Source of the DNA: Macrostomum lignano
Taxonomy: Eukaryota
Assembly: GCA_002269645.1 (NCBI GenBank)
Contig: NIVC01003910.1
Location: 1-64,000, forward strand
Direction of reading: 5' to 3'
DNA: 64,000 bases
The translations under genes and the position numbers were made by a program. Shown here piece by piece: positions 28,801 through 62,538 of this stretch (its first letter is position 1; the number at the start of each line of letters is the position of its first letter). The notes below the pieces were generated by a model. It was not told the DNA's origin, ran no database searches, and was given only the letters and a program-made list of their open reading frames with translations.

Positions 28801-31800
28801 GCGCTGGAACTTCTTCCTTTACGGCCGACGGTTCGAGCTCCACACCGATCACCAGGCTCTCACCACGCTGCTATCATCATCTGGGAGCGGACACCGGCCA
28901 CTCAGACTGCATCGCTGGGCTGATCGTTTGTTAAACTACTCCTTCACCGTCAAGTACGTCCCGGGTGCCAAGAACATCGTGCCTGACTTTCTGTCGCGCT
29001 GCCAGGACACGGCCGAGCCGACGGAAGGCGATGAAACAGACGGTCTGGAAGTCCAAAGAGTGCTCCTGGCCGAGGCGCTGACCGTGGTCACCGAGGACGA
29101 ACTGGCGGAGGCAACGTCAAAGGACGAGCTCCTGGCACGAGTCGCAGAGTTCACAGTTTCCGGTTGGCCAGACAAGAAAAAGCTCGATGAGCGCCTGCTG
29201 CCCTACTGGAGTGTTAGGAACGAGCTGACTGTTTGGAGCAACGGCAGGTGCTTGGCCATGGGAACTCGTGCCGTCATACCGGAAGAATTGCGCCAGCGAG
29301 TGCTCGACTTAGCGCATCAAGGTCACAAGGGAGTCAGCAGGACCAAGCATCACTGCCGAGACACCGCGTGGTGGCCCAAAATGGACAGCGACATCGAGAG
29401 GTTCGTCAGCAGCTGCTCTGCGTGCATCATCAGTGAGAAGAGCTTTAAGCCGCATCGGACAGTGCTGACCCCGACCAAGTGGCCGAAGGAACCGTGGACA
29501 GAGCTGCAGATCGACTTGTTCGGAGAGCTGCACGAGGGTGCACCACAGAACTGCCGTTTCATACTCGGTGTACATGACCTGCATTCAAAGTGGCCCGAAC
29601 TGGTCTGCCTCTCTTCAGCGACGTCTGCGACTATCATCAAGAGTCTCACGGCGCTGTTTTGTCGCTGGGGCATTCCGCGCGTAATCACCACCGATGGAGG
29701 ACCCCAGTTCATCTCCCAGGAGTTCAACGACTTCCTAAAGGCGTACGGCATCAATCATCGTCAGACTCCGTTCTACCACCCTCAAGGAAATTCCGGAGTG
29801 GAGCGCCTGAACCGCGTAGTCAAAGAGGGCTTGAAGAGCCACCTTCAAGACGGCTACTCGTTCCTGGAAGCGGTGCAGTCCATCCTGTGGGCGTACCGAT
29901 CGACACCGCATGCGCTGACCGGCGTGACGCCAGCGGAGCTGATGCTCGGCCGCAAGATCACCACGCCGCTGTGGACGCTGCAGCCGAAGCGAGCGACTCG
30001 AGAGCACCCACTGGCCGATCAGATCCAGGAGCGGCAAAGACGGCAGTTCAAGCGGCTCAACAGATCCCGGCAGCCGCCGCGCCAATTCCGGGTCGGCGAC
30101 CTGGTGCGAGTGCGATCTCCGCGGATGCGAGGCAAGCTGCAGAGCCACGTGTCACCACCTCTACGGGTCAGCGACATCATCAGCCCGACGATCGTCAGGT
30201 TAGAGGACGGCTCAAGGTGGCACACCAGCCTCTGTATGCCTCATGCGGAGCCCGAGGGTGCCAGCACGACTTCAGCAACGGCAATGCCGCCACAGCCGCC
30301 AGTGGCTGCAGAGGCGGCAGCGCCAGAAGGCCCGACGGACCCGCCGCCGGCGACCGCTGAGGCCGACGCGGAGCTGCGGCGCAGTACGCGACTGCGGGCA
30401 CCACCGTTGTGGTACGGCCAGGTCGTGACGCATTGATTGCCAGCTGTGAAGGGAATTAGTGACTGTTAAGGAGGAGGGTGAATGTTGTAAAGTGAGTTTA
30501 CTCACTGGGTTGTTTTGCTAGTCGGTGTTTGGGGGTCAAGGGATCCGATGTACATGCGCGCTCTGTTTGTATATGTACATGCGTTCTCGAGTAAATATAA
30601 GAATAGCTCCACCCTTTGGGTGAGGGTTTGAATTTTGTTTGTTGGACTAAACCTGACTGGCTTGTCTCTCGCTCACCACAATCCGCCCCTAGCATCCGCC
30701 CCTAGCATCCGCCCCTAGCATCCGCCCCTAGCATCCGCCCCTAGCATCCGCCCCTAGCATCCGCCCCTAGCATCCGGCCCCAGCATCTAGCCCTGACCCT
30801 ACATGCAGCATCCGCCCTGTGATGCTTGGTGTACTTTTCACTCGATCACCCCAGATGGCTTGTCTTGCATCATAAATAGACCGCACAGTTCCAAAGCTGG
30901 CCAGCCAACCCACTCCGCAGACTCCCAGCGCAAGAACCTGACGGTGTTCTTCCACAACGGCATCCTGTCCCTCGGCCAAGAGTACATCAACAACGACAAG
31001 GTGGTGCAGGACGTCCTCAGCCAGTTCATCGGCATGAGCGAGTCCAAGTTTTACAATCTGATCTTCCGGTTCAGCCCGGGCGAGTAAGTCTGAATTTAAA
31101 AAAACTGCTGCCATTACTACGAGTAGGCTGGTGCCAGCTCAGAATTTTGTTTCTTTCCGAATTTAATATTCTGAAAAATTCGCCCCCAGGGTCAGCCTGG
31201 AGCTGAACGGCATCCGGCGGAACCGCATGATCAGCCGGAACATCAACCTGCAGAGCCTGCAGCTGGGCGGAGGCTTCCAGGGCTGCGTAAAGGACCTGGT
31301 GGTTGGCGACACGTGAGCTCGGATTGAATTCGCTGCAATTAGTTACTAGGGAGTTACTCGAGTTACTACGGACCTACTCGAGTTACTAAGGATCTACTCT
31401 AGTTACTAGGGATCTGCTTAAGTTACTAGGGACCTACTCGAGTTACTAGGTACCTACTCGAGTTACTAGGTGCCTACTCGAGTTACTAGGTACCTACTCG
31501 AGTTTATAGGGACCTAATCGAGTTACTAGGGACCTACTCAAGTTACTCGCACTCAACGTCCAGCTCGCCGCCAACTCCAGGCTCATTCACCTTCGCTCGC
31601 TGCTGCGAGTTGTCGCCGGCGGCTCGGCGGTGCAGTTCGAATCCTGCGGCTCAGCTGACGCCGACGGCCATGTTGGAGGCGCCGGCACCGGCGGCGACGT
31701 TCGTGTGCTGGACGGCTGCGGCCGCGGCAGGCTGCCGGCGAGGCGCAACTTCGCTGGCGCGGTGCTGTACCGCTCAGCCCTCGGGGGCTTCACCCGCCTT

Positions 31801-39880: not shown

Positions 39881-42800
39881 ACTGTCTCTAAACCCCACTT
39901 TAACCCCGCCTTCCAGATTACACAATAAACAGTTCAGTAAGTGAACATTGTGCACACATTATTGTTTCTCATGCGTTTCTCTTTTTTTGTCTCTACAATT
40001 GAATGCCAAATTTTTGGCGCCAATACGTGAGTTCTGACTAAAACTAATGTTTCTAAATTGCTACTCAAATTCTCTCTAGTAAGTAGCGAGATACTTATAA
40101 TGAAGACCTTGTCTTGTTTTCATTAAACTTTGAATTTCAACACGGCTTGAAGGTCAGCGGCTGAGCAAGGCGCTCCAGACTCCGGCCTCATCCATGCGGC
40201 TCCTCACTGCATGAGAGGTGGGGCTCGGGGGGGAGGGTGGGAGATGCCGTGGCTAATCCATAGTCGGGTAAAACCGGAGAGCTGCAGCTGTTTCAATATT
40301 AGGGGAGAATAATCCCCCTGGCGGAGCACGGCTGCGATGAGGCTGGCAGCTGCAGGGATCCGAATCAAAGTGGGATTTGACACGAACCTGGCTGCTTGAT
40401 CTGCTGCGGCTGTCGAAGTATTTGGGACGCGGATCCCAATCTGATACAGATATCCCTAGCCTTCCTTTTCTCCCCTTGAGCTAGTCAGGTGGCTTCGTGA
40501 CTCGCAGCGCAAAAAATATAAAGAGGATTTTTTCAGCAGGGGACCGGGGCGCGGCCTTCTCATTTCCGCTGCTCGCTCCGAGTCCCTGCTCAAGCTTCTC
40601 CAGGGATATTTATCCCAAGAAGGCGTGTTCCCGGCTCCGCTTCCCCACCCCATATTTTCCCATATTCGCCACGATTTCCCGGCGCTGAATAAAAATCCCC
40701 GCTAATCCTGAGGCCAGGTGGAAATCCCATTCCCGCTGATGAAGCTCGGTGTTCGCCCAGGTGAAAGAGAAAATCCTGGCGAACTCGAGAGCCTCGCCGC
40801 CGCCGCCGCCGCCGCATCTCCGCGTGCACCGGGCGGAAAATCTCCGGCAGCTGCAGCCGAGAATTTGCGGACTTGACTGATGCAGCCCAGCCTCTGTGTG
40901 GCAACTCCCAGCAAATATATTTGCTCTACTCGCCTACTTGCAGTAAGCTGTAGTGAAAATTATTTCATTTGACAGCGAGAAAATATAAATTCAAAGACTA
41001 AAAAATAGGCTAAATTCTGAAAACTAAAACGGCCCTTTTAAGGGCCACCCAAGCAAGTTGCAACTCGTTGGAATGATGACGTGGGTGGGGATGATGACGA
41101 TGATGAAGAATCTGGATGCGCCTGCGGGCGGCCGGCCATTCAGGCAAACTGCTCGATTTTGAAAGCCCTTCCGATCCATTGAGAGTTCATGCAGCCCCGC
41201 CCCGGAGATGCTGAAAGCAAGGGGAGGCCAGAAGATTATAAACTCGTCTTCTCCCGGTCCGTTTTGATGAAGCAGTCCAGCCTCTCCTGCTTTCCCTATT
41301 CAGCAGCTCGAGCAGCTCTTTGGCCCGCCTCCCTCAGGGGCTCTCAGGGCCGCCCGGGACGGGACGGGCAGGTAATTATCCATTTACCTGGACCGGGAGG
41401 CGGTCAAAGAGGAAGTCGAGTCGTAGGGAGGGGGGGAGAGAATCTGTGCGGGGCTGATGAGGCCAGGATGCTGGCGTAGTGAATCGGACTCGGCCGCTGA
41501 TTACCGGACAGGCCCGGCCAGGCCGGCCGGACAGCACGGGACAAGTCAGGTGAAGTCAGAGACAAAGCAGCTCGCAGACGGCAGCGGAAAGCAGCGGGAA
41601 ACTGAGCGAGTTGAGCGGCTCAGAGAGCAGCAATGATAAGGCGGGGATGCTGCACGCGTGTCCGCCTCATCAACTTCACTAGGCAGCTGCGCCGATGACG
41701 GCAGAAAAGTTCCAGCACTGCAGAGGCCGGCTGCCCCGTGCAGCTGCCTCAGCTTCCCCTCTGCATCTGCGCCCCAGCCTCTGCCTGTTTCTGCCCAGAT
41801 GAGTCCTTGAGCGGCTCCGCAGCGGCTCCGCAGCTGCAATCAAGAGTAGAAGGGGAAGGGGAGTTGTCAAAGGCAGGCCCGAACTATTCGGGATTCGGAG
41901 AGCTGCTCTGAGCAGCAGCAGCGGCAGCGGCTTCCCCTGCCGGAGCCGGGCTGCAGTGCGGGCGAGCGGCTCGTGGGGGCTGCGTGCGATGGAGGCAGGC
42001 CGGAGGCTGCCTTTTCCCCAAGGAGGCTGCAGCTGCAGACAGGGGAGGCTGAGTTGCCCGGCAACCGCTGCCGGCCCAGCGAGCAGCGAGTCGGAGGCGG
42101 CGATCGCTCGGGGATCGCGGATATCGATTTTCCCTGCTCCCGGCCAGCCTCCTCCAGCCTCACTGAAGGCTGCGAGTGCAGCGGCGGGGCAGAGGGGGCG
42201 GCCGCGGCCCGAGTGCTCAGCTGCTGCCCTCTGCGATCGCGAGCTGCCGGAGGAGGCTGCGGCCAGCCGCCCAGCCCGCCGCTCTCAAAGCCCAGCCTCT
42301 GCCTCATCTCTCCTTCCTCTCTCCCTTTGCCGAGCGGGCCTCAATTTTTGCGTGCGAAATCCCCTCGCTTCCTCTCTCGGCTCTGCCCCCCCCCCCAACC
42401 GAGCAGGGAGCGGGCGGAGAGGCTGCCAACAACTCTCTGAGTCCTCTGAGTCACCCAAGCAGAACCGTGCCGGCCTGGCTTGCTGCTCGGGTAGATGAGG
42501 AAGGGAAGCCCCAGCCTCTCTTTGGCCAGGCTCGCCATCTCCTTCCTGCTCCCCTTTGCGCTTGTCTGCTTGGCACGCAACCCTGAACTCTAAGGCTAGG
42601 GAACCAAGCTATGGGAGAAAAATCCCCCTCTCATTTCATTTCTTCCAATTCATCCTCTCTGCAGGGCCCTCTGGCGGGGCTTAAACAAATGTCTTTGTGC
42701 CTCACCGCAGACAAAGACCTCAGCCGAGACCGGCCTGCGCGCTAATGGAGAGGCGGTGTCGCGGAAACCTGAGCCATTGTGCCTGCCGGTTGCGCCGACA

Positions 42801-51015: not shown

Positions 51016-54000
51016 GTCAGACAGACACACAGACAGACACACACACAGACAGACAGACAGACAGACAGACACGCAGCCACAACCCATGCGGAGGTCAAAC
51101 GGGCCGCCAACCGGATTGATTTGGCATGCGGAAAGGCGGCACCGGAGGAAGGCAGTTTTATAACACGGATTGGCGGCTATCAACAGGTGAGATAAATACT
51201 TAGCCAGCACAGATAAGTACAGGTGAATTCGAGTCCTCAGCACCAGCAGCATGAGCTAATACACCTGTCACTAATTAATGCATTAACAATACCTATGCCA
51301 GCGGCAGCCACTGGCGCACCGCTGCGATTGCAGCTGCCGTGGCTGCCAAAGCTGGTCAAATCGAGAAATGCGGGCTGGCCGCCGCCGCCGCTGGCTGAAA
51401 GCGAAGTTGAAGCAAGAGGGGCAGGAGGCAGTGAGGCACTACTGCTGACAGGATGAAGCGCAGAGGAATCTGGGCGGCCTCTATTAAACAATATTAAAAA
51501 TGAAATCAACAAGCACTGAGACTGACAGCTGCTGAGATGCGACAGACCAACACCGGATTAAAAATTTTAATGAGATAAAAAACTTTAAAACCGCTGGAAA
51601 CTGGCAGCTGCGTTCCATGAAACCGTTAGTTAACAATAGGAGCAGATGAAGGGTGAAAGAGGAAGGAGGCTGAACAATGGGAGCAGACGAAGGATGAAGG
51701 AGGAAGGAGGCTGAACAATGGGAGCAGACGAATAATGAAGGAGGCTGAACAATGGAATCAGATGAATGATGAAGGAGGCTGAACAATGGGAGCAGATGAA
51801 TAATGAAGGAGGCTGAACAATGGAATCAGATAAATGATGAAGGAGGCTGAACAATGGGAGCAGATGAATAATGAAGGAGGCTGAACAATGGGAGCAGATG
51901 AATAATGAAGGAGGCTGAACAATGGAATCAGATGAATGATGAAGGAGGCTGAACAATGGGAGCAGATGAATAATGAAGGAGGCTGAACAATGGAATCAGA
52001 TAAATGATGAAGGAGGCTGAACAATGGGAGCAGATGAATAATGAAGGAGGCTGAACAATGGGAGCAGATGAATAATGAAGGAGGCTGAACAATGGGAGCA
52101 GACGAATAATGAAGGAAAAAGGAGGCTGAACAATGGGAGCAGACGAATGATGAAGGAGGCTGAACAATGGGATCAGACGAATGATGATGGAGGCTGAACA
52201 ATGGGAGCAGACGAATGATGATGGAGGCTGAACAATGGGATCAGACGAATGATGAAGGAGGCTGAACAATGGGAGCAGACGAATGATGATGGAGGCTGAA
52301 CAATGGGATCAGACGAATGATGAAGGAGGCTGAACAATGGGAGCAGACGAATGATGATGGAGGCTGAACAATGGGATCAGACGAATGATGAAGGAGGCTG
52401 AACAATGGGATCAGACGAATGATGAAGGAGGCTGAACAATGGGAGCAGACGAATGATGAAGGAGGCTGAACAATGGGAGCAGATGAATAATGATGGAGGC
52501 TGAACAATGGGAGCAGATGAATAATGATGGAGGCTGAACAATGGGAGCAGATGAATAATGATGGAGGCTGAACAATGGGAGCAGATGAATAATGATGGAG
52601 GCTGAACAATGGGAGCAGATAAATGATGAAGGAGGCTGAACAATGGGAGCAGATGAATTATGAAGGAGGCTGAACAATGCGATCAGACGAATGATGAAGG
52701 AGGCTGAACAATGGAATCAGATGAAGGATGAAGGATTATGGGTAAAGGAGGCTGAACAATGGGAGCAGACGAAGGATGAAGGAGGAAGGAGGCTGAACAA
52801 TGGAATCAGATGAATGATGAAGGAGGCTGAACAATGGGAGCAGACGAAGGATGAAGGAGGAAGGAGGCTGAACAATGGAATCAGATGAATGATGAAGGAG
52901 GCTGAACAATGGGATCAGACGAATGATGAAGAAGGCTGAACAATGGGAGCAGACGAAGGATGAAGGAGGAAGGAGGCTGAACAATGGAAGCAGATGAATG
53001 ATGAAGGACGAAGGAGGCTGAACAATGGAATCAGATGAATGATGAAGGAGGCTGAACAATGGAATCAGATGAATGATGAAGGACGAAGGAGGCTAAACAA
53101 TGGGAGCAGATGAATAATGAAGGAGGCTGAACAATGGGAGCAGATGAATAATGAAGGAGGCTGAACAATGGGAGCAGATGAATAATGAAGGAGGCTGAAC
53201 AATGGGAGCAGATGAATAATGAAGGAGTATGGGTAAAGGAGGCTGAACAATGGGATCAGACGAATGATGAAGGAGGCTGAACAATGGAATCAGATAAAGG
53301 ATGAATGATTAAGGATGATAGAGGTTGATTAAGTCCACCACCGCAGATCCACCAGATCCCGCCACAACCCCACCACAGCCCTCACAGCCAAAGGGGTCGG
53401 TGAGGCCGCTGGAGCCCCAATCAAACTGCAGAGCCGCTCCAGGCGCCGAGCTGTCAACTGGCGAAGCTTCCTCATCCTGTGCGGGGTCACCGGTGAACTG
53501 ATAGCTGAATGATTGCCAGCTGGCTTGAGCATTCGACACACTTTAAAAAGTAATCTACGCAACATATCGGTAGCGGATGTGGGTAGAGTTTGAATTTACT
53601 GCTCTCACCTGCAGGGCCGCTGCGGCGCCGCCGAATCTGCCGCAGTCGTCGAACTGCTGCGAGGCTCCTTGGGCGGAGCAGAGCGCGGACTGGGCCGCCA
53701 CAGGCCTGCGGCTGACCAGCTGCGGGCGGGCGGAAGCAGCAAGGGGCAATGCTGAAACCCTGTTGACTGCTGACATCCTACAGACTCCCCTGCTGACACC
53801 CTACGGATCCACTGCTGACACCCTACTGATTCCCCTGCTGACACCCTACTGATCCCCTGCTGACACCTTACTGACTCACCTGCTGACACCTACTGATCCC
53901 CTGCTGACACCTTACTGACTCACCTGCTGACACCTACTGATCCCCTGCTGACACCCTACTGATTCCCCTGCTGACACCCTACTGATCCCCTGCTGACACC

Positions 54001-56401
54001 CTACTGACTCCCCTGCTGACACCCTACTGATCCCCTGCTGACACCCTGCTGATTCCCTTGCTGACACCCTACTGATTCCCTGCTGACACCCTACGGATCC
54101 ACTGCTGACAACCTACTGATCCCCTGCTGACACCATGATTCTCCCGCATACTTACAGCCATAAATTCCCCTATATATAAGCTCGTAGTCAGCCCCCACTG
54201 CGATAGATTTCATGTTACTTCATCTCAGCCCAGCCTCACTGACCACATTGTTCGGATCGATCCGCATGGTGCTGAGCAGGTCCTGGTAGAAGCGGGACTG
54301 GCTCCACTGGTACTTCACGGCGGGCGAGTTGTCCAGGTCCAGCAGGTTGCTCCACACGTTGGCGGTGGCCGGCTGGCTGCGGAGGCGGCGGCGAAAGTAG
54401 CGGGGGTGACTGACTGACTGACTGACTGGCTGACTGACTGGCTGACTGACTGACTGACTGACTGACTGACTGACTGACTGACTGACTGACTGACTGACTG
54501 ACTGACTGACTGACTGACTGACTGACTGACTGACTGACTGACTGACTGACTGACTGACTGGCTGACTGACTGGCTGACTGACTGACTGACTGACTGACTG
54601 ACTGACTGGCTGACGACTGACTGACTGACTGACTGACTGACTCGAGTGACTGACTGACTGACTGACTGACTGACTCGAGTGACTGACTGACTGACTGACT
54701 GATTTGAGTTGGTGACTGACTGACTGACTGACTGACTGACTGACTGACTGACTGACTGGCTGACTGACTGACTGACTGACTGACTGACTGACTGACTGAC
54801 TGACTGACTGACTGACTGACTGACTGACTGGCTGACTGACTGACTGACTGACTGACTGACTGACTGACTGAGCGATGCAGGGCAAACAGCACCAAAAACA
54901 AGACAAAAAAGAGATAAAAATGTTGCGATCCCATTTCCCAAAAAGAAGACTATTAGCAAAAAAATGGAAGCAGATTGAAGGAAAACCCAGCGCAGTCACT
55001 GGAATTCGCTAACCAGTGGGTGCAGCGGCACACCTGCTGCTGCTGCCTGCAATTCGCAAAGCAAGAAAAAACTCAGTGCTCAGCATCCTGACACGGCATC
55101 ATGGGGATTAAATTGAGACACAGCAAAACTCACCTGTGAGCAGCTCGGGTCACGATGTCGCTCACAGCTTCCATCTGGGCGGGGCTCTCAGCCAGCAGCA
55201 GGCTGCTCAGCACGGATTCGTCTATGGCCGCGGCCTCCTCAGCCGGGCAGTGCGGCACAGCGGCATCTGCGTCTCCAAGTGCATCATTGAGCAGCTTCTC
55301 AAGCGCTGCGTGCAAGTCTGAGCACATCCGGGTGAGGTGTCGCTGCTGCTGCTGCTGCTCCGGGCCCTCCACCGTGGCCGATTGAAACTCTTCAAAGTCG
55401 TCGAAGTCATCGTCGTCAAGGCCGGCGTCTGAGGAGTTCGGGAATCTTCGTGATGGTGATGATGATGATAGTGATAGAGCACGTTTATGATGATGATGAT
55501 ATTGATGATGGGAGGGTGATGATAATGATTATGATGGTGATGATGGTGATGATTATGATGGTGATGATGATTATGATGGTGATGATTATGATGATTATGA
55601 TAGTGATGAAGCAGGATTATGATGATGGGAGGGTGATGATAATGATGATTAAAATGGTGATGATCCTGATGATGGTGATGATGATGCTAATAATGATGGA
55701 GTCTAGGGCATTCACAGTTTCCGATCTTTCTCTCAGTCTAAGAAAATTGTTTTACCTGCAGTACCGGTAGTTTCTATGGCAACGGCTTCACCAAAATCTG
55801 CCCATTGGTCGTCGTCGTCGGCAGCGACCTGATTGCCTGGCTGGCCGAAGCCGCTAGGAGGGCCGGAGAAGTCGGCAAAGTCCACCGGCCAGTCAGCGGC
55901 TGCGCTGGTGGCCAAACAATTTCCACTTTCGCTGTCATTGGTTGCTAAGGGACTATCAGCTTTTCTGACACCGGTTGCTAAGCAACTGTCACTGCTGTCA
56001 TTAGCTAAACTGGTTGCTAAGCAGCTGCCACTGCTACTGTCGTCGGCTGGACTGGTTCCTAAGCAACTGCCATTGTTGTTGTCATTAGCTGCACTGGTTA
56101 CTAAGCAACTGCCATTGTTGTTGTCATTAGCTGCACTGGTTACTAAGCAACTGCCATTGTTGTTGTCATTAGCTGCACTGGTTGCCAAGCAACTGTCCAT
56201 GTTGTTGTCACTGCCAGCATTGGTTGCTAAGCATTCGTCAGTTTTACTGACACGGGCTTCCTTGTCCTCACCCTTGGCTGCATCAACCGCGTGCCATTCG
56301 TTGTAATTTTCTGTGCCAGCACCAACATCTGTTGCTAAGTGACCATTGCTGTTGCCAGTGGCAATGCTGTCCTCCAATGCCATTGAAGAATTGTCGCCCA
56401 T
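50403..56401 (-). CDS. AFTPH: Aftiphilin-like AP-1/clathrin accessory protein, ~562 aa, 7 exons
   Basis: Phase-consistent exons 56401-55756, 55428-55134, 54376-54244, 53751-53609, 53504-53386, 51469-51293 (least sure), 50578-50403 (TGA). Acidic gamma-ear motifs DFADF, DDDDQWADF, DDDDFDDFEEF. Conserved blocks VWSNLLDLDNSPAVKYQWSQSRFYQDLLSTMRIDPNNV, AAGL..PKEP and QFDWGSSGLTDPF resemble the aftiphilin C-terminal region as recalled. Confidence 0.8.
50765..51072 (+). repeat. (AGAC)n microsatellite in an aftiphilin intron
   Basis: Directly visible. Confidence 0.95.
51640..53300 (+). repeat. 34-bp minisatellite GAAGGAGGCTGAACAATGGGAGCAGATGAATAAT in an aftiphilin intron
   Basis: Longest single array in the window. 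Confidence 0.95.
53765..54130 (+). repeat. ~23-bp minisatellite CTGCTGACACCCTACTGATCCCC in an aftiphilin intron
   Basis: Directly visible. Confidence 0.9.
54407..54870 (+). repeat. (TGAC)n microsatellite in an aftiphilin intron
   Basis: Directly visible. Confidence 0.97.
55450..55700 (+). repeat. (ATG)n-like degenerate microsatellite in an aftiphilin intron
   Basis: Directly visible. Confidence 0.9.
55770..56343. promoter_or_regulatory. Cluster of about 10 RFX X-box-like palindromes inside aftiphilin coding exon 1
   Basis: GTTTCTATGGCAAC (55770), GTTGCTAAGCAAC (55974), GTTCCTAAGCAAC (56055), GTTACTAAGCAAC (56097, 56139), GTTGCCAAGCAAC (56181), plus degenerate copies. Function not shown. 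Confidence 0.45.
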
Positions 56402-56718
56402 GCAGCCATGCAGTTAAACAAAAAAGTTGAAAAGTTGAAACTAAAAAAGACTGATTTGAGGTTTGACAAATCTGGTTAAGATTAGCAGATTTTTTTAATA
56501 ACAAGCTTACAAAATACCTAGAACTTTGAAGGTTCAAAGGCAAATTGTGGCATGAATAAAAAGAAATAATAATTTAAATAAATAGGCATTCCCAAGGACT
56601 AAGAAGATAGGTGAGTGGTAGTCATATTGCTAAAAATTGCAACATTGCACAATGGAACAGCTAAGCACATCTTTTTCAATGTGAAAAATATGCTTGATAT
56701 TAGCTTTTAATAGTGCCT

Positions 56719-57016
56719 TCTAGGGGTTGTAGCCTAGTGGTTAGGGTGTCGGACTCACGACTTGAAGGTCGGGGGTTCGATTCCCGATCCCTCTGCAACA
56801 ATTTGTGTCCTTGAGCAAGACACTTAACTCTGCGTTGCTTCAGTTTACCCAGCTGTAAAATGGGTACCAGCATTAGCTGGGGTAATTGAGGGTGTGTGTG
56901 GCGACCCCCCAGTCCTTGGACTGAACAGCCGTACGCAGCCTTCAGATGCGCCGCGCAATAGCTGCGGCTGAGCTGTCGGTTGCACATCTGCCCATTGGGC
57001 AGGTGTAATCAACAAA
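56719..57016 (+). mobile_element. tRNA-derived SINE, copy 2, with CORE-like domain and 10-bp TSD
   Basis: A-box TAGCCTAGTGG, B-box GGTTCGATTCC; GTGTCCTTGAGCAAGACACTTAAC..CAGTTTACCCAGCTGTAAAATGGG; TSD AATAGTGCCT at 56709-56718 and 57017-57026; homologous to 25053-25345. Confidence 0.9.
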
Positions 57017-57241
57017 AATAGTGCCTACAATTTTGCCTACTTTTTGTTTGCTAAGAGTCTAAGACTGATAGAACAATGATAAAAAAGAAACAATTGTCAA
57101 AAAATAATATAACTTTCAGCAATTTATTATGACTGATTATTTTCATTAATCAATTCATATTTTTTCTGCTTAGTATATAAATCATAGATTGAACAATGAT
57201 AGGAATTTTTCTGACTAGATACTACACACATAAGATAGAAA

Positions 57242-57427
57242 CAGTGGCATAGCCAAGAATTTTTTTAATTCAAGGGAGACCTATTTAGCACCTATAAGAG
57301 AGGGTATAAGAGGGGAGATTTTTTCTCTAAAATTGAGGGGGGGGTTACTTCTTTGCAGAATTTCAGGGGGGATAATATTGGAAGGCAGGCCTTTTAGCCC
57401 CCTTAGGGCCTCTTGGCTATGCCAAAA
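57242..57427. mobile_element. Decayed hAT-type MITE (186 bp)
   Basis: Perfect 14-bp inverted repeat TGGCATAGCCAAGA (57245-57258) / TCTTGGCTATGCCA (57411-57424); 8-bp direct repeat GATAGAAA at 57234-57241 and 57428-57435. Confidence 0.7.
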
Positions 57428-59699
57428 GATAGAAAATGGTACTATTGCTAAGTATATATATATATTTATAAAATAACATTTTATTATAGAATGATTTTAT
57501 AATAATAATTAAGGAGAAAACTAGACAAAGAATTATTTTGATAAGAATCAAAAATAAAAAAGCATATTAATTCTATTAAAAATTATTAATCTGCAAACAA
57601 AAAATTTAGAAAGTAAATGAATGACTCAAGATAACAATTACAATTTTGAAAATGGTCTATTAAAAAATCATTTAGGTGAGATATAAAGAAATCTATCTAA
57701 ACTAGACAATAAATAAAGTTACAATAATTAATTAAAAATAAAAGTAATTATTATTTACTTTTAGATTTTTTTGTCAAATGATAATATGGTCAACAAAATT
57801 TTAAGCTACAATACTTTTAATTCAATATTCATTTATAGCAGACAGTAGCAACCTAAGGGGTCAGTAGCATAAGCACTTTCAAATCAGCAATGAGGCAATC
57901 AGTTAGATTTAGAGTGGCAAATTTAGCCTGGCCATAATGCAAATTGCTCAATTGGCCAATAATATATTGGTTAAAACAGAAAGTTTTTGTAGTTTGTGAA
58001 GATAAAACCATAGAATTTCTAGAAGCCTTTCTATGTGCAAAGATATAAAAAGGCTATTGACTAATATAGAGCAACCTGAATTCAAGTTTTAGCTATATTG
58101 CTGCAGTACCATTACATATACTGCAAGTATTCATTTCATAGAAGGCTTCAAAAACTGTGATAACTTTTTATTTTATCCAATAGCAAGGCCAAGGCCATAG
58201 AAATAGATAAATTATTGTCTAAGATCCTAAAGCAATGGCCCAAAATTCAATAATTAAAAAAATTATTTAAAAAATACTTTTTCATTTTAAATATTTTTAT
58301 TATGTTTTTATTCTGAAAATTGAGTTCTTTGTTTATCATAATCAGTGTGTGCTATTTATTAATATTATACTTGTTAGCAATTTAGCATGGCAAATATTTA
58401 ATTTTGAAAAAAATTGTGAGACAGAACAATGCTAAAATTAGGAACAGAAAATTAGGTAAAGAGATGCAAAATATATCTGAAAAATGCATTTAATAGCTTG
58501 AAAAACATAACTTGGTTTAAAACTATTCCTATATCTAGATCTAGACACCTGCATCTGGATTCTGGTACATGTATTTATAATAAAAAAAGTTAACCTAGTA
58601 GATGCAAATTTATTTTTCTTAAAAAATCACAGACAATTAGCAATGGTCTAACCCTGGCCAACTAGAGAAGAGAAGAAGTCAGTGAGTAAACTTTTTAATG
58701 TTTGAAGTGTAAACGGGACAAGTTGTATTTAGGACAAGTTCATTGTAATAGTTTGCCTAAAAAAGCTGCCACTATTAGCTTAATCTTGAATAGTTTTTCT
58801 AACTTTTTTAGTACACAACTGCATTCTGTCGCCAATAGAGATGTGCATAGTAGTTAGTTAAGACGTGCTAAGATTTTAAACTGTTTATAATAGCAAATCT
58901 ATAATTTTCCTGGAAAACCCTGGAATTTAAACAGGAATAGAAACAATTTGCGAAACAGTAATGAGTTAAAGACTGTTGTAATTAAAATAGTCCTTAAATG
59001 ATTTAAGACTAAAATTGTTCATTTAGAGAACACAATGCAACTTGATTTACTATTTTTCTTATAATGCTGCAGCTTTAGCATGTTAAGTTTAATTTGAAAT
59101 TTTACAACATTTTTTCCTTGCTTAATTATAAGTCATACTCGTACTTGCACATGTAGATATAATATTTTGTATTGGAGGGGGCGCAATCCTTAGGGGCGCC
59201 AATATTGGGTGTCTTGTGAAGGGCGCAATTTTTGTGGGGGGGGGCGCAATTTTGGTGGGGGCGCAATTGTGGGGGCCCCCTGCGTCCAAGTCAAAGACTT
59301 AAAAGTTAAGGGATTGCACCCGATATTATGGAGCTGGGCTGATGAGGAAAATTCGCTTGGCCCCTGAAGAATGGGACGACGATGCCCCTTGGTCATTCCC
59401 GGTAAAATTATGGTATTGAAACCTATAGAAAAATCATACCAGCAGTTAAATTTGAAAAATTAAAACTCGCTTTGAAACAAGCAAGAGGTTCTGAGGAAAT
59501 GTATTTTCCTCGAAAGTCACGACTGCATACAATTAGCTGATTTCAGTCGATTGCAGTTGCAGTCCTTTTGACTAAGAAATAATGCACTGTATTAGACTCA
59601 TCCATCGACTGTAAGGAAGAGAAATTTGGGTTCTCAGAGGCAGAAAGGGCAGGAAACTTCTTGAATTCAATGTACAGCCGACCTGAAATGTTTTCTTCG

Positions 59700-59714
59700 G
59701 TTGCTATGCGATAC
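59700..59714. promoter_or_regulatory. Candidate X-box (RFX site) in the IFT88 upstream region
   Basis: GTTGCTATGCGATAC ~275 nt before the ATG. The left half-site is canonical; the right half is imperfect and has an extra base. IFT88 is a known RFX target in other animals. Confidence 0.4.
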
Positions 59715-59988
59715 GCGCACAAATTCTCTCATATCTCTCTCTCCACCTGCCCCAGCCCAGAGTACAGTTGCCCTCCTCGCGGAGAGGCCAGTTGGCTGTC
59801 TCCTGAGCCCCCTCCTCACCGCCTCACCTCTCCTCTCAGCCGCGGCAAAATTTGGCGCGAAATTCAAACTGTGGAATTCCAGCGAATTTTTGTTCATGGC
59901 CCGCAGTAGTGAAGCAGCTGCTTTTGTATTTTGAAAGCTTTTCCATCTAACGAATAATTTAGTGTGTTTTCATCAACTGCCTCCAGCG

Positions 59989-62538
59989 ATGAACCAATTC
60001 GACGCCATGGAGGATGAGGACGACCTATACGGCGGCTTTAACGAGTACTCCGCTCTGAACACCGAGGAGATTCTCCGGGACGAGTCCGTGCAGCAGGCTG
60101 TGCGCACCAGCCACGGCAGGCGGGCCCCGAACATCGCTGCCGCCGGCACCGCGGGGAAGCCGCCGCCAACGGGCACGCGGGCCGGCCTGCGCACCGGACA
60201 GGTCGGGGCCGGAGCTGCCGGCACCGAGGCCCGGCCGATGACCGCCGTGCGAGCCGCCGGCTTCACCCGCAACGCTCGCAAAGGATCCGCTGGCGACATT
60301 CGACCGGCGCCGCCGCTCGAGGCCAAGGCGGATAACAGTCCGGAGGAGAAGATCCGGGCGCTGGAGAAGGAGGTGGTGCAGCTGGTTGAAGAATCCTGTC
60401 TGGCGCTGTCGCGTGGCGAAAAGGGCGCCGCCTTGCAGAAGGCGAAGGAGGCAGCCAAGAAGGAGAAGGACCTGCTGCGGAAGCGAGAGGACCTGAGCAG
60501 CACGGACCAGGCAAACATGGACCTGACGTACATGGTTCTATTCAACCTGGCCAATCAGTACCAGGCGAATGACATGTACCAGGAGGCCCTCAATGCCTAT
60601 CAGGCCATCGTGAAGAACAAGATGTTTGCCCACGCCGGGAGACTCAAGGTCAACATGGGCAACATCTACTTCCGGCAGAAGCAGTTCGCCAAGGCCATCA
60701 AGTTCTACCGTATGGCCCTGGATCAGATCCCCAACACGCACAAAAGCCTGCGCATCAAGATCATGCAGAACATCGGCATTGCCTTCATCAAGATGGGTCA
60801 GGTGCACGACGCCATCACGTCGTTCGAGCACATCATGCAAGAGCAGCCGGACTTCAAAACTGGCTTCAACCTGTTGCTGTGCTACTACACCATTAACGAA
60901 AGGAACATGATGAAGATGGCTTTCACAAAGATGCTCTCCGTCGACTTGAAGCTGGGTGACCCGGACCGCTACACCCTCGCGCCCAACAGCGATAGGCAGA
61001 CGGAGCTCATTCAGGAAGTCATCCGCAATGACGACCTGCGCAAAGTGGAGATGGAGAGGGAGCAGGACGCTGAGCGGCGCATCAAGATGGCTGCCAAGAT
61101 TATCGCGCCGGTCATCGAGGAGACTTTTTCGGACGGCTACGACTGGTGCATCGACCAGGTAAAGTCCTCCGCCTTCCTCAACATCGGCCACGATCTGGAG
61201 ATCGACAAGGCCATGATGTTCCTCAAGCAGCGGGACTTCCACCAAGGTGAGGAGTCTCTCCACCGCAAAGCCATCGAATCATTGAAGTCCTTCGAGAAAA
61301 AGGACACCCGGCTGGCCTCCGCTGCCGGAGTGAATTTATCGTTCCTGCACTACTTGGAAGGCAACCTCCAGCAGGCGGACAAGTATGCTGACCAGTCGCT
61401 GCAGGCTGACAGGTACAATCCGGCCGCTCTGGTCAACAAGGGCAACGTGTTCTACCAGCAGAAGGACTTCGAAAGGGCTCGCGACTTCTACAACGACGCA
61501 CTGAACAACGACAGCTCCTGTGTAGAGGCTCTGTACAACCTGGGCCTGGTCAACAAGCGGCTGGGCCGCATGGAAGAGGCTCTGGACGCGTTTCAGAAGC
61601 TTCACACGATCTTCAAGAACTCGGCGCAGGTCATCTACCAGCTGGCCGATGTGTTCGAGAAGATTGGCGAGCGCAACCAGGCGCAGGAGTGGTACCTGCA
61701 GCTGAACGGCATTCTGCCCACCGACCCCAAGCTGCTGCAGCGTCTGGCCGCTTTCTGCGAGGATGAGGGTGACAAGTCGCAGGCGTTCTCCTACTACTAC
61801 GATTCCTTCAGATACTATCCGGCCAACCTCGATGTAAGTGGACGGGGTGCCTTCTGTGATTTAGGCTTGCCTGACAACATATCCTTATTAGGAATGAGCT
61901 GGTTTATTTTAAGACTTACGTGATTTCAAGTCGAGACCCCTACCGCTTTGCTCTTCCAGGTGATTGAGTGGCTGGGCGCCTACTACATCGAGGCGCAGTT
62001 CTGCGAGAAGGCCATCGGTTACTTTGAGCGGGCCGCCATGATGCAGCCGGGCCAGGTGAAGTGGCCGCTGATGATCGCCAGCTGCCACAGGCGCAGCGGC
62101 AACTACCAGGTGGCTCTGGAGACCTACAAGTCCGTGCACAGGCGCTTCCCAGACAATGTTGAATGCCTGAAGTTCCTGGTGCGGATCAGCACCGACCTCG
62201 GCCTGGACGAGGCGGCCGAATACACTGCCAAACTGAAGAAAGCCGAGAAGAGCCAGGAGGCCCGAGAGCAGCGGCAGGCCAGCGCTGGACGGCGCAGCAG
62301 CGTCGTTGGCCAGGCGGGCAGCAGAGAGAACTCGGCGGGCACCGGCGGCTACCGGCCTCAGGCGCAAATGCCGCCGCAGCCGCACCAGCAGCAGCGGCAG
62401 CCCCTGCAGCAGCAGCCCAGCATGGACTACGAGGACCCACTGGGAGCGGAGCGCGAGCGCCCGAGGACGGCGGCGAGGCGCGCCCCGGTGGACGAGTTCG
62501 CGGACGAGGAGCTGGACGACACCCTGCTGCCAGAGTGA
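59989..62538 (+). CDS. IFT88: Intraflagellar transport protein 88 (TPR protein), exons 59989-61833 and 61960-62538, ~807 aa
   Basis: EDEDDLYGGFNEY N-terminus, RPMTAVRAAGF, VLFNLANQY, AGRLKVNMGNIY..AIKFYRMALDQIP, ALVNKGN, IEWLGAYYIEAQFCEKAIGYFERA, FPDNVECLKFLVRI, DPLGAERERPRTAA, ADEELDDTLLPE*. Intron GAT|GTAAGT..TTCCAG|GTG is phase 0. Confidence 0.97.

What the first reader, a model, noticed from the sequence alone, without database searches (positions are those of the whole stretch)
55770..56343. Phased array of RFX X-box palindromes written into the aftiphilin coding exon, facing the cilia gene IFT88
Seen: GTTTCTATGGCAAC (55770), GTTGCTAAGGGAC (55941), GTTGCTAAGCAAC (55974), GTTGCTAAGCAGC (56013), GTTCCTAAGCAAC (56055), GTTACTAAGCAAC (56097, 56139), GTTGCCAAGCAAC (56181), GTTGCTAAGCATT (56223), GTTGCTAAGTGAC (56331). 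From 56013 to 56223 the spacing is exactly 42 bp, or four helical turns. The sites force codons rare in this window (TGC TTA GCA ACC; GCC ATA GAA) where other exons use CTG/GCC/ATC. Established: RFX binds GTNRCY-N0-3-RGYAAC and controls IFT genes, including IFT88/osm-5. Inference: a dual-coding exonic enhancer or RFX sink amplified by a coding minisatellite 3.6-4.2 kb upstream of divergent IFT88. I do not recall such an arrangement being described.
Basis: partly seen in the sequence, partly recalled or inferred. Interest (0 to 1): 0.75.

Follow-up and report, generated by a model that had tools for sequence, protein, structure and literature searches.

The report
Coding minisatellite spelling RFX-like palindromes
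A 42-base tandem repeat in the first coding exon of a flatworm (Macrostomum lignano) aftiphilin-like gene spells a palindrome resembling an RFX binding site, so the "phased array" comes from ordinary repeat amplification, and nothing here shows that it controls the neighbouring cilia gene IFT88.

Summary
Every listed string is at its coordinate, six sites are exactly 42 bp apart, and the 13-mers resemble proven RFX sites (polyomavirus EP element GTTGCCTAGCAAC).

The window is Macrostomum lignano contig NIVC01003910.1. The sites lie in exon 1 (56401-55759, minus strand) of a Clathrin_bdg/aftiphilin-family gene, head-to-head with IFT88, whose ATG is at 59989.

The number and phasing of the sites come from a 42-bp (14-codon) coding minisatellite, SCLATSAANDNNNG x 6.4. 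It is one of 59 tandem arrays that cover 33% of the window, and one homeologous copy has one unit fewer.

- The "rare codons" are exon-wide: GC3 is 0.52 outside the motifs and 0.82-0.89 in neighbouring genes.
- A tenth peptide copy (NCLATS, 55908) keeps the peptide but not the palindrome.
- Differences among copies preserve the consensus no more often than chance (7 of 14).
- The same window holds "phased" SOX-like cores and X-box-like hits made by laminin PGYYG codons.

A matrix built from 31 validated C. elegans X-boxes finds three independently arisen site types in the exon, against 0.16 expected, and IFT88 has no proximal X-box.

The regulatory reading is untested and unlikely (about 10%). 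This is an ordinary feature.

The parts
55759..56401 (-). Exon 1 (first coding exon) of the Macrostomum lignano Clathrin_bdg/aftiphilin-family gene. ATG at 56401, donor CAG|GTAAAA after 55759. It encodes a Ser/Asn/Asp/Ala/Gly/Thr-rich repeat region followed by acidic Trp/Phe motifs (DWPVDFADF, DDQWADFGE).
   Evidence: 222-codon ORF. Donor and acceptor sequences, in frame with exon 2. NCBI gene models of 406 and 441 aa on the sister contigs span it. It is identical in three genomic copies apart from 1 substitution and one 42-bp indel, while flanking non-coding DNA differs by about 3.5%.
55969..56233 (-). 42-bp (14-codon) coding minisatellite, 6.4 copies. Consensus peptide SCLATSAANDNNNG, coding-strand unit AGT TGC TTA GCA ACC AGT GCA GCT AAT GAC AAC AAC AAT GGC.
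   Evidence: TRF period 42, 85% matches, score 325. Unit alignment. Homeolog L001 has exactly one unit fewer, in frame.
56331..56343 (.). Degenerate outer copy, peptide GHLAT, coding strand GTCACTTAGCAAC. Fits the RFX consensus.
   Evidence: matrix score 13.2
56223..56235 (.). Copy ECLAT, AATGCTTAGCAAC. Only one half-site, does not fit the consensus.
56181..56193 (.). Copy SCLAT (TTG codon), + strand GTTGCCAAGCAAC. The best 13-mer; differs from the polyomavirus EP RFX site only at the central base.
   Evidence: matrix score 16.8; PyEP sequence in PMC2859551 and PMC3834807
56139..56151 (.). Copy SCLVT, GTTACTAAGCAAC. Fits the consensus.
56097..56109 (.). Copy SCLVT, GTTACTAAGCAAC. Its unit is identical to the one at 56139. 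Fits the consensus.
56055..56067 (.). Copy SCLGT, GTTCCTAAGCAAC. Does not fit the consensus.
56013..56025 (.). Copy SCLAT with Ser = AGC, GTTGCTAAGCAGC. A synonymous change that breaks the consensus.
55974..55986 (.). Copy SCLAT, the perfect palindrome GTTGCTAAGCAAC.
55941..55953 (.). Copy SPLAT, GTTGCTAAGGGAC. Does not fit the consensus.
55908..55920 (.). The peptide is kept and the palindrome is lost.
55770..55783 (.). Independent 14-bp X-box-like site GTTTCTATGGCAAC from codons GCC GTT GCC ATA GAA ACT (AVAIET), 11 nt before the splice donor. One base from the C. elegans osm-5 (IFT88) X-box GTTACTATGGCAAC.
   Evidence: matrix score 17.0; table of validated X-boxes
56351..56365 (.). Independent 15-bp X-box-like site ATTGCCACTGGCAAC from codons ATT GCC ACT GGC AAC (IATGN).
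   Evidence: matrix score 16.2; half-site GGCAAC from Gly-Asn codons
55136..55426 (-). Exon 2 of the same gene (AGLDDDDFDDFEEF...TRAAH), GC3 0.72.
   Evidence: Matches UniProt M. lignano Clathrin_bdg models P0121 and P0122; coordinates
54244..54378 (-). Exon carrying the first half of the Pfam Clathrin_bdg (PF15045) domain and an LLDLD clathrin-box-like motif (SQPATANVWSNLLDLDNSPAVKYQW...), GC3 0.96.
   Evidence: PF15045, 27.2 bits, E = 3.6e-6, cut-off 22.5
56402..59988 (.). AT-rich (about 36% GC) intergenic region between the divergent aftiphilin-family and IFT88 start codons. It contains a tRNA-derived SINE-like element and no X-box scoring 11 or more.
59989..62538 (+). IFT88 coding region: two exons (59989-61836 and 61963-62538) with one 126-nt intron.
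   Evidence: 100% identity to M. lignano BOX15_Mlig014944g2 and about 60% to IFT88 of many animals; exon mapping

Best explanation
This is a lineage-specific coding minisatellite. A 42-bp (14-codon) unit encoding SCLATSAANDNNNG was duplicated head to tail, by replication slippage or unequal exchange, in the first coding exon of the M. lignano aftiphilin-family (Clathrin_bdg) gene. The result is a low-complexity, probably disordered N-terminal spacer in front of the acidic Trp/Phe adaptor-binding-type motifs.

The founder unit happened to encode Ser-Cys-Leu-Ala-Thr as A-GT-TGC-TTA-GCA-AC-C, which reads as the palindrome GTTGCTTAGCAAC. Each duplication copied that palindrome, so the number of 'X-boxes' and their exact 42-bp phasing are by-products of repeat amplification. 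The unusual codons reflect the AT3-rich composition of the whole exon. No cis-regulatory role is needed.

Shown here: the tandem structure, the coding frame, copy-number difference between genomic copies, the exon-wide codon bias, and the lack of preferential preservation of the consensus.

Inferred: the slippage mechanism, the disordered-spacer role, and the absence of regulatory function.
For: - TRF finds a 42-bp array at 55969-56233, 6.4 copies, 85% matches.
- All CLAT-type sites share one frame and one codon pattern, so they are alike by descent. Thirteen of the 15 strict half-sites in the exon come from the SCL and LAT codons.
- Homeolog L001 differs by exactly one in-frame 42-bp unit.
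- The window is M. lignano. In that genome simple and tandem repeats make up 15% (PMC5730564).
- The window has 59 tandem arrays covering 32.7% of its bases.
- Three of 53 minisatellite units carry a perfect 6+6 palindrome, against 1.2 expected.
- A SOX-like core AACAATGG occurs 49 times against 2.25 expected, as 34-bp and 42-bp phased arrays.
- Other X-box consensus hits (15264, 16613) are laminin-EGF PGYYG codons, which shows that coding motifs produce such matches.
- GC3 is 0.42 in motif codons, 0.52 in the remaining 159 exon-1 codons, 0.72-0.96 in later exons and 0.82-0.89 in neighbouring genes.
- The founder peptide GSCLATS encodes a consensus match with probability about 0.05-0.06 under background codon usage.
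- The tenth copy keeps NCLATS but not the palindrome.
- Among the copies, 7 differences are consensus-compatible and 7 are not, against 33-38% compatible expected; p = 0.15-0.27.
- The array RNA folds no better than shuffles, z = +0.64.
- The repeat region has no homolog among 1.8 billion representative proteins. This fits aftiphilin being a fast-evolving HEATR5 cofactor (PMC10798858).
- 72% of residues 15-170 are S, N, D, G, A or T.
Against: - The sequence match to RFX sites is very good. The half-sites GTTGCT/AGCAAC equal those of the validated che-13 X-box. A 13-bp site with a 1-nt spacer (polyomavirus EP, GTTGCCTAGCAAC) is a proven RFX1 site.
- A half-site matrix from 31 validated C. elegans X-boxes puts 7 of the window's 12 sites scoring 13.0 or more inside this 643-bp exon. 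These include two sites unrelated to the repeat, 55770 and 56351.
- That makes three independent origins, where codon-order shuffles give 0.16 sites per exon and P(>=3) = 0.001. The test is post hoc.
- Across units the 13-bp core varies less than the rest of the unit: 4 of 13 columns against 25 of 29. Flank misalignment inflates that contrast.
- IFT88 has no X-box scoring 11 or more within 3.6 kb upstream of its ATG, so a distal element is not redundant.
- The three genomic copies are too similar to test conservation: 1 substitution in 604 nt.
Confidence: 0.78

Rival explanations
1. Functional RFX cluster. The exon is a homotypic cluster of RFX (X-box) sites bound in ciliated cells. It acts as a distal or shared enhancer for the divergent IFT88 gene, or as a promoter-proximal element of the aftiphilin-family gene itself. 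Repeat expansion increased the number of sites.
For: - Five 13-mers fit GTNRCYNRGYAAC.
- Seven sites score at or above the 10th percentile of validated C. elegans X-boxes. They have three independent origins, against 0.16 expected from codon shuffles.
- Site 55770 is one base from the osm-5 (IFT88) X-box.
- 13-bp sites are real RFX targets.
- IFT88 has no proximal X-box.
- RFX control of IFT genes is established in nematodes, flies and vertebrates.
Against: - The multiplicity and phasing are fully explained by tandem duplication.
- Divergence among copies shows no preferential preservation of the consensus, and one copy has lost the palindrome while keeping the peptide.
- The codon bias is exon-wide.
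- 30 of 31 validated nematode X-boxes lie within 285 bp of the ATG, and all are 14-15 bp long. Here the distance to IFT88 is 3.75-4.2 kb.
- In M. lignano, 2 kb or less of upstream DNA sufficed for tissue-specific reporters for the genes tested.
- An X-box match on its own is not predictive of RFX dependence (PMC2375033).
- The finding comes from a genome-wide scan, so a large look-elsewhere factor applies.
- RFX involvement in flatworm ciliogenesis was not documented in the papers found.
Confidence: 0.1
2. RFX sink or decoy. The array titrates RFX protein away from its targets.
For: Only the local density of sites. Decoy arrays are a known concept (own knowledge).
Against: There are about 7 sites per gene copy and 3 copies in the assembly. 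Equally good matrix matches, extrapolated from the rest of the window, number roughly 60,000 in the 764-Mb assembly. The array would therefore hold a negligible share of the sites.
Confidence: 0.01
3. Peptide-motif selection. The conserved core is a short linear motif, x-C-L-A-T-x, repeated to add binding valency in the aftiphilin-family N-terminus. The DNA palindrome is incidental. This is a refinement of the best explanation, not a contradiction of it.
For: Leu and Thr are invariant in all 10 copies, and the core varies less than the rest of the unit. The copy at 55908 keeps the peptide with four different codons.
Against: The Cys and Ala positions change (H, P; V, G). Among units, changes fall about equally on all three codon positions (read from the codon alignments). 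No homolog or known motif was found.
Confidence: 0.25
4. Exon 1 is not translated across the repeat: it is a 5' UTR or a mis-annotated start, and the array is a non-coding minisatellite that happens to stay open.
For: UniProt models P0121 and P0122 start at exon 2. GC3 of 0.5 is unlike the other exons. Repeat-derived long ORFs are common in this window, and the opposite strand is open for 157 codons here.
Against: ATG-initiated 222-codon ORF, in frame across a canonical donor into exon 2. NCBI models of 406 and 441 aa include it. The indel between copies is in frame. The exon is about 20-fold better conserved between homeologs than flanking DNA. The aftiphilin-like acidic W/F motifs lie at its 3' end.
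Confidence: 0.1

Closest known systems
Coding minisatellites / in-frame VNTRs in disordered protein regions (for example the human DRD4 exon-3 48-bp VNTR, mucin repeats, yeast FLO1; own knowledge)
   Same: Head-to-tail units whose length is a multiple of three, an open reading frame maintained, low-complexity peptide, copy number differing between gene copies (5 versus 6 units), and units diverging through both synonymous and non-synonymous changes.
   Different: Short (about 6 units) and confined to one flatworm lineage as far as the databases show. The unit happens to contain a 13-bp palindrome.
RFX X-box cis-elements (C. elegans ciliary X-boxes such as che-13 GTTGCTATAGCAAC and osm-5 GTTACTATGGCAAC; polyomavirus EP element GTTGCCTAGCAAC)
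   Same: The half-sites GTTGCT/AGCAAC are identical to che-13. The 13-bp geometry is that of the EP element. Site 55770 is one base from the osm-5 site.
   Different: Validated ciliary X-boxes are single or double sites 60-767 bp upstream of the ATG (30 of 31 within 285 bp). They are 14-15 bp long in C. elegans and conserved between species. Here the sites are inside a coding exon of a non-ciliary gene, 3.75-4.2 kb from IFT88, and were multiplied by tandem duplication. Neither binding nor conservation has been tested.
Exonic transcription-factor sites ('duons') and decoy binding-site repeats (own knowledge)
   Different: No occupancy data exist here. The codon bias is not site-specific, and the array is far too small to act as a sink.

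Membership tests
Coding minisatellite (in-frame tandem repeat) | Head-to-tail repeats with a unit of 10 bp or more | tested here: met
   TRF: period 42, 6.4 copies, 85% matches, 55969-56233
Coding minisatellite (in-frame tandem repeat) | Unit length a multiple of 3, lying within a translated open frame | tested here: met
   42 bp = 14 codons. 222-codon ATG ORF spliced in frame to exon 2; NCBI models include it. Translation itself was not shown.
Coding minisatellite (in-frame tandem repeat) | Copy-number variation between alleles or paralogous copies | tested here: met
   L001 has exactly one unit (42 bp) fewer than L002, L003 and the window
RFX X-box cis-regulatory element | Match to the consensus GTNRC(C/N)-N0-3-RGYAAC, or to a matrix of validated sites | tested here: met
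   5 of 10 repeat copies fit GTNRCYNRGYAAC. 7 exon sites score 13.0 or more on a matrix from 31 validated C. elegans X-boxes.
RFX X-box cis-regulatory element | Position in the promoter of the regulated gene (validated nematode sites -60 to -767, 30 of 31 within 285 bp of the ATG; fly screens used 1-3 kb) | tested here: not met
   3.75-4.2 kb from the IFT88 ATG, inside the coding exon of another gene. No site scoring 11 or more in the 3.6 kb upstream of IFT88.
RFX X-box cis-regulatory element | Conservation of the site in orthologous loci, or preservation beyond neutral expectation | tested here: inconclusive
   No other Macrostomum sequences were retrievable. Homeologs are nearly identical across the whole exon. 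Among paralogous copies, 7 changes are compatible and 7 incompatible, p = 0.15-0.27.
RFX X-box cis-regulatory element | RFX binding and RFX- or X-box-dependent expression | not testable with these tools
   Needs EMSA, CUT&Tag, RNAi or reporters
Aftiphilin / CLBA1 family (Pfam PF15045 Clathrin_bdg) | Clathrin_bdg (HEATR5-binding HR2-HR3) domain above the Pfam cut-off | tested here: met
   27.2 bits against a cut-off of 22.5, E = 3.6e-6, on the half of the domain in the exon at 54244-54378. UniProt names the M. lignano proteins 'Clathrin_bdg domain-containing'. The domain is shared by aftiphilin and CLBA1, so 'aftiphilin' in the strict sense is not proven.
Aftiphilin / CLBA1 family (Pfam PF15045 Clathrin_bdg) | Acidic WxxF/FxxF adaptor-ear-binding motifs (own knowledge of mammalian aftiphilin) | tested here: inconclusive
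   DWPVDFADF, DDQWADFGE and DDDDFDDFEEF are present. This is resemblance by eye only.
IFT88 | Full-length similarity to IFT88 orthologs with a TPR architecture | tested here: met
   100% identity to M. lignano BOX15_Mlig014944g2; 55-62% identity over 93-94% of the query to IFT88 of many animals; TPR Pfam hits

The most novel reading that the evidence does not exclude
Through repeat expansion plus two independent sites, the first coding exon of the M. lignano aftiphilin-family gene has become a dense cluster of real RFX sites. The cluster is bound in ciliated cells and acts as the X-box input for the divergent IFT88 gene, which lacks a proximal X-box. This would be a protein-coding minisatellite doubling as a ciliary enhancer whose strength changes with repeat number.
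Probability: 0.07. Interest if true: 0.6.

Novelty: new member of a known kind. Interest (0 to 1): 0.17.

Why it matters
As it stands, the finding mainly matters as a caution. In a genome where a third of the sequence is tandem repeats, any motif caught in a repeat unit becomes a "phased array" that beats every shuffle control. Peptide motifs (PGYYG, SCLAT) can also spell long transcription-factor consensus sequences. Independence by descent has to be removed before enrichment is counted.

If the minority reading were true, it would be an unusual case of a coding VNTR tuning a ciliary gene. It would also give a first handle on RFX-dependent ciliogenesis in flatworms, testable with existing M. 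lignano transgenesis.

Tried and rejected
- **Ortholog test of the palindromes.** Homology searches with exon 1, IFT88, the C-terminal exons and a full HMMER scan of 1.8 billion representatives returned no other Macrostomum species. The representative scan gave only unrelated 14-aa-repeat proteins. The cross-species test could not be run.
- **Homeolog comparison.** The three contigs of GCA_002269645.1 are identical across the exon apart from 1 substitution and 1 unit indel. Expected synonymous differences are about 2, given 8 synonymous changes in 2550 nt of IFT88. The comparison has no power to separate motif bases from other bases.
- **RNA-structure role.** The array RNA folds no better than shuffles, z = +0.64. 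Rejected.
- **Proximal IFT88 X-box that would make the array redundant.** None found with four consensus forms, mismatch scans or the matrix.
- **Intergenic region as one recent transposon insertion** (which would imply a formerly short bidirectional promoter). Only a SINE-like element and no terminal repeats were found. Not supported.
- **Genes next to the other strong palindrome at 42053.** No Pfam hits on the surrounding ORFs.
- **Independent synonymous recoding of each copy.** It gives P < 1/5000 for 5 sites, but it was rejected as a null model because the copies are alike by descent.
Full report
**Where the window comes from.** The 653-codon ORF at 59962-61923 is 100% identical to Macrostomum lignano protein BOX15_Mlig014944g2 and about 60% identical to IFT88 of many animals. 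The same 807-aa protein is encoded on three contigs of assembly GCA_002269645.1. One of them, NIVC01003910.1, is identical to the window, and window coordinates equal contig coordinates. The second copy (L002) is 99.65% identical, and the third (L001) is a more diverged homeolog. This redundancy is a known property of the sequenced DV1 line (PMC5730564).

**The observation.**
- GTNRCYNRGYAAC matches 11 times counting both strands, against 0.49 in shuffles.
- Only 5 of the nine 13-mers fit that consensus.
- Tandem Repeats Finder reports a 42-bp array at 55969-56233, 6.4 copies, 85% matches.

**What the region is.** On the minus strand, an ATG at 56401 opens a 222-codon frame. A canonical donor (CAG|GTAAAA, after 55759) joins it in frame to an exon beginning AGLDDDDFDDFEEF.
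- That exon and the following ones match two UniProt M. lignano 'Clathrin_bdg domain-containing' proteins.
- The exon at 54244-54378 hits Pfam PF15045 above its cut-off.
- NCBI gene models of 406 and 441 aa on the sister contigs span the first exon.
- PF15045 is shared by aftiphilin and CLBA1, both fast-evolving HEATR5 cofactors (PMC10798858). 'Aftiphilin-family' is therefore the safe name.
- IFT88 lies head-to-head. Its ATG is at 59989, and its coding region is two exons with one 126-nt intron. The listed sites are 3.75-4.2 kb from it.

**Anatomy of the repeat.** The exon holds ten copies of x-[C/H/P]-L-[A/V/G]-T. The tandem core is SCLATSAANDNNNG, encoded AGT TGC TTA GCA ACC AGT GCA GCT AAT GAC AAC AAC AAT GGC.
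- The palindrome is A-GT-TGC-TTA-GCA-AC-C. All copies share the same frame and codons, so they are alike by descent.
- Thirteen of the 15 strict half-sites in the exon come from the SCL and LAT codons.
- Homeolog L001 has exactly one unit fewer, in frame, which is typical minisatellite behaviour.
- Residues 15-170 are 72% S, N, D, G, A or T.
- The region has no homolog in two very large protein searches.

**Is it more than chance?** Counted naively, yes. With descent removed, much less so.
- If each copy is recoded independently with the neighbours' codon usage, the exon gets 0.27 sites and never 5 in 5000 trials.
- The right question is whether the founder peptide GSCLATS would be encoded as a consensus match. 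That probability is 0.05-0.06.
- The window is one-third tandem repeat, with 59 arrays.
- Three of 53 minisatellite units contain a perfect 6+6 palindrome, against 1.2 expected.
- The SOX-like core AACAATGG appears 49 times against 2.25 expected, as 34-bp and 42-bp phased arrays.
- Two further X-box consensus hits (15264, 16613) are the codons CCC GGT TAC TAT GGC for the PGYYG motif of laminin-type EGF repeats.

So in this window, phased motif arrays and peptide-driven consensus matches are routine.

**The codon argument.** TTA is 4%, GCA 6% and AGT 8% of their families in IFT88 plus the ankyrin gene, against 75%, 39% and 61% in the exon. But the bias is exon-wide.
- GC3 is 0.42 in the 55 codons that touch a motif and 0.52 in the other 159.
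- It is 0.48 in the non-repeat first 56 codons.
- It is 0.72-0.96 in later exons of the same gene and 0.82-0.89 in the neighbours.
- Outside any site, AAT, GAA and GGT are also over-used.

The sites do not force the codons. The exon as a whole is AT3-rich.

**Tests for DNA-level constraint.**
- The tenth copy at 55908 encodes NCLATS as AAT TGT TTG GCC ACC. The peptide is kept and the palindrome is gone.
- Of 14 distinct base differences from the consensus 13-mer, 7 keep the X-box consensus and 7 break it. Random substitution would keep 33-38%, so p = 0.15-0.27.
- The core varies less than the rest of the unit, 4 of 13 columns against 25 of 29. Several flanks are not truly alignable.
- Between homeologs the whole exon is nearly invariant: 1 change in 604 nt, against 106 in 3019 nt of intergenic DNA and 8 synonymous changes in 2550 nt of IFT88. 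This supports a constrained coding exon but cannot separate motif bases from other bases.
- The array RNA is not unusually structured, z = +0.64.

- The sequence likeness is real. GTTGCT/AGCAAC are the half-sites of the validated che-13 X-box.
- A 13-bp site with a 1-nt spacer, the polyomavirus EP element GTTGCCTAGCAAC, is a standard RFX1 probe and tethering site.
- I built a half-site matrix from the 31 validated C. elegans X-boxes in PMC3245922. It gives 12 sites in the window at or above the 10th percentile of validated sites, and 7 of them are in this exon.
- Those 7 include two that do not derive from the repeat. One is 55770 (GTTTCTATGGCAAC, one base from the osm-5/IFT88 X-box). The other is a new 15-mer at 56351 (ATTGCCACTGGCAAC).
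- That makes three independent origins in 643 bp, where codon-order shuffles give 0.16 and P(>=3) = 0.001. The test is post hoc.
- At half-site level the excess disappears: 4 independent origins against 3.0 expected.
- IFT88 has no X-box scoring 11 or more in the 3.6 kb upstream of its ATG. The best is 10.9 at -1085.

**What speaks against a regulatory role.**
- Validated nematode X-boxes are 14-15 bp long and lie 60-767 bp from the ATG, 30 of 31 within 285 bp.
- In flies, an X-box match on its own does not predict RFX dependence. Conservation between species was needed (PMC2375033).
- In M. lignano, up to 2 kb upstream sufficed for faithful reporters for the genes tested.
- As a sink, 7 sites per copy are negligible against roughly 60,000 equally good matches extrapolated to the 764-Mb assembly.
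- The finding comes from a scan of many windows for many kinds of motif, so the look-elsewhere factor is large (inference).
- The papers I found did not document RFX control of cilia in flatworms. The one planarian study found concerned FoxJ1.

**Verdict.** The feature is a real, lineage-specific, copy-number-variable coding minisatellite in the fast-evolving N-terminus of an aftiphilin-family protein. Its RFX-like palindromes are best explained as a founder coincidence multiplied by tandem duplication (confidence about 0.78). RFX binding in vivo is plausible on sequence grounds and was not testable. A selected enhancer role for IFT88 is unlikely, about 7-10%. The decisive tests are sister-species comparison, an RFX binding assay, and recoded reporters in the NL10 line.

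Noticed in passing
window 56720-57010 (+); second tRNA-like hit at 25053-25122: A tRNA-derived SINE-like element. Its head matches the Rfam tRNA model (35 bits; ARAGORN calls no gene). The body, ...cttgagcaagacacttaac...cagtttacccagctgtaaaatggg..., resembles the CORE/MIR SINE core (resemblance from memory). It sits 320 bp upstream of the aftiphilin-family ATG.
   Followed up: partly
whole window: There are 59 distinct tandem arrays covering 32.7% of the bases. Almost every intron of the laminin-like gene (about 3900-16650) and of the aftiphilin-family gene carries its own minisatellite, for example 34 bp x 44 at 51703-53227 and (TGAC)n x 116 at 54407-54871.
   Followed up: partly
window 59989-62538 (+): The IFT88 coding region has a single 126-nt intron (61837-61962). 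IFT88 of other animals has many introns (own knowledge), so this suggests extensive intron loss or a retro-copy origin. The 5' flank is AT-rich and carries no recognisable X-box.
   Followed up: partly
window 42053-42065: The best-scoring X-box-like site in the window, GTTGCCCGGCAAC (perfect 13-bp palindrome, matrix score 18.3), lies in a GC-rich stretch. No Pfam-recognisable ORF is nearby.
   Followed up: partly
window 15264-15277, 16613-16626, 4208-4221: X-box consensus matches at 15264 and 16613 are generated by laminin-type EGF repeat codons (CCC GGT TAC TAT GGC = PGYYG). The hit at 4208 lies inside the ORF 3907-5766, which carries an EGF_laminin Pfam hit. They serve as an internal control showing that peptide motifs can spell long TF consensus sequences.
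   Followed up: yes
window 26348-30436 (+), with identical 13-bp arrays (ATCCGCCCCTAGC) at 25895-26069 and 30681-30787: An intact-looking Ty3/gypsy-type LTR retrotransposon polyprotein ORF of 1362 codons (gag-like/PNMA, protease, RT, RNase H, integrase). It is flanked by matching minisatellites that probably lie in its LTRs.
   Followed up: no
window 20932-21267 and 21544-21793: Two other minisatellites whose units contain perfect palindromes: GAGTGAGATCACTC x 14 and CTGAGCAGTGCTCAG x 8. Phased palindrome arrays are therefore not unique to the exon.
   Followed up: yes
window 55833-56306 (+): The strand opposite the repeat is also open for 157 codons (LVAKQLPLLLS... repeats). This is a by-product of a stop-free repeat unit and is not evidence of an antisense gene.
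   Followed up: no
window 56409 (minus strand), 8 nt upstream of the exon-1 ATG: An out-of-frame upstream ATG (ATGGCTGCATGGGCGAC) overlaps the start codon, read directly from the sequence. The NCBI model on L002 starts at the second in-frame Met (codon 7). The true start codon is therefore uncertain.
   Followed up: no
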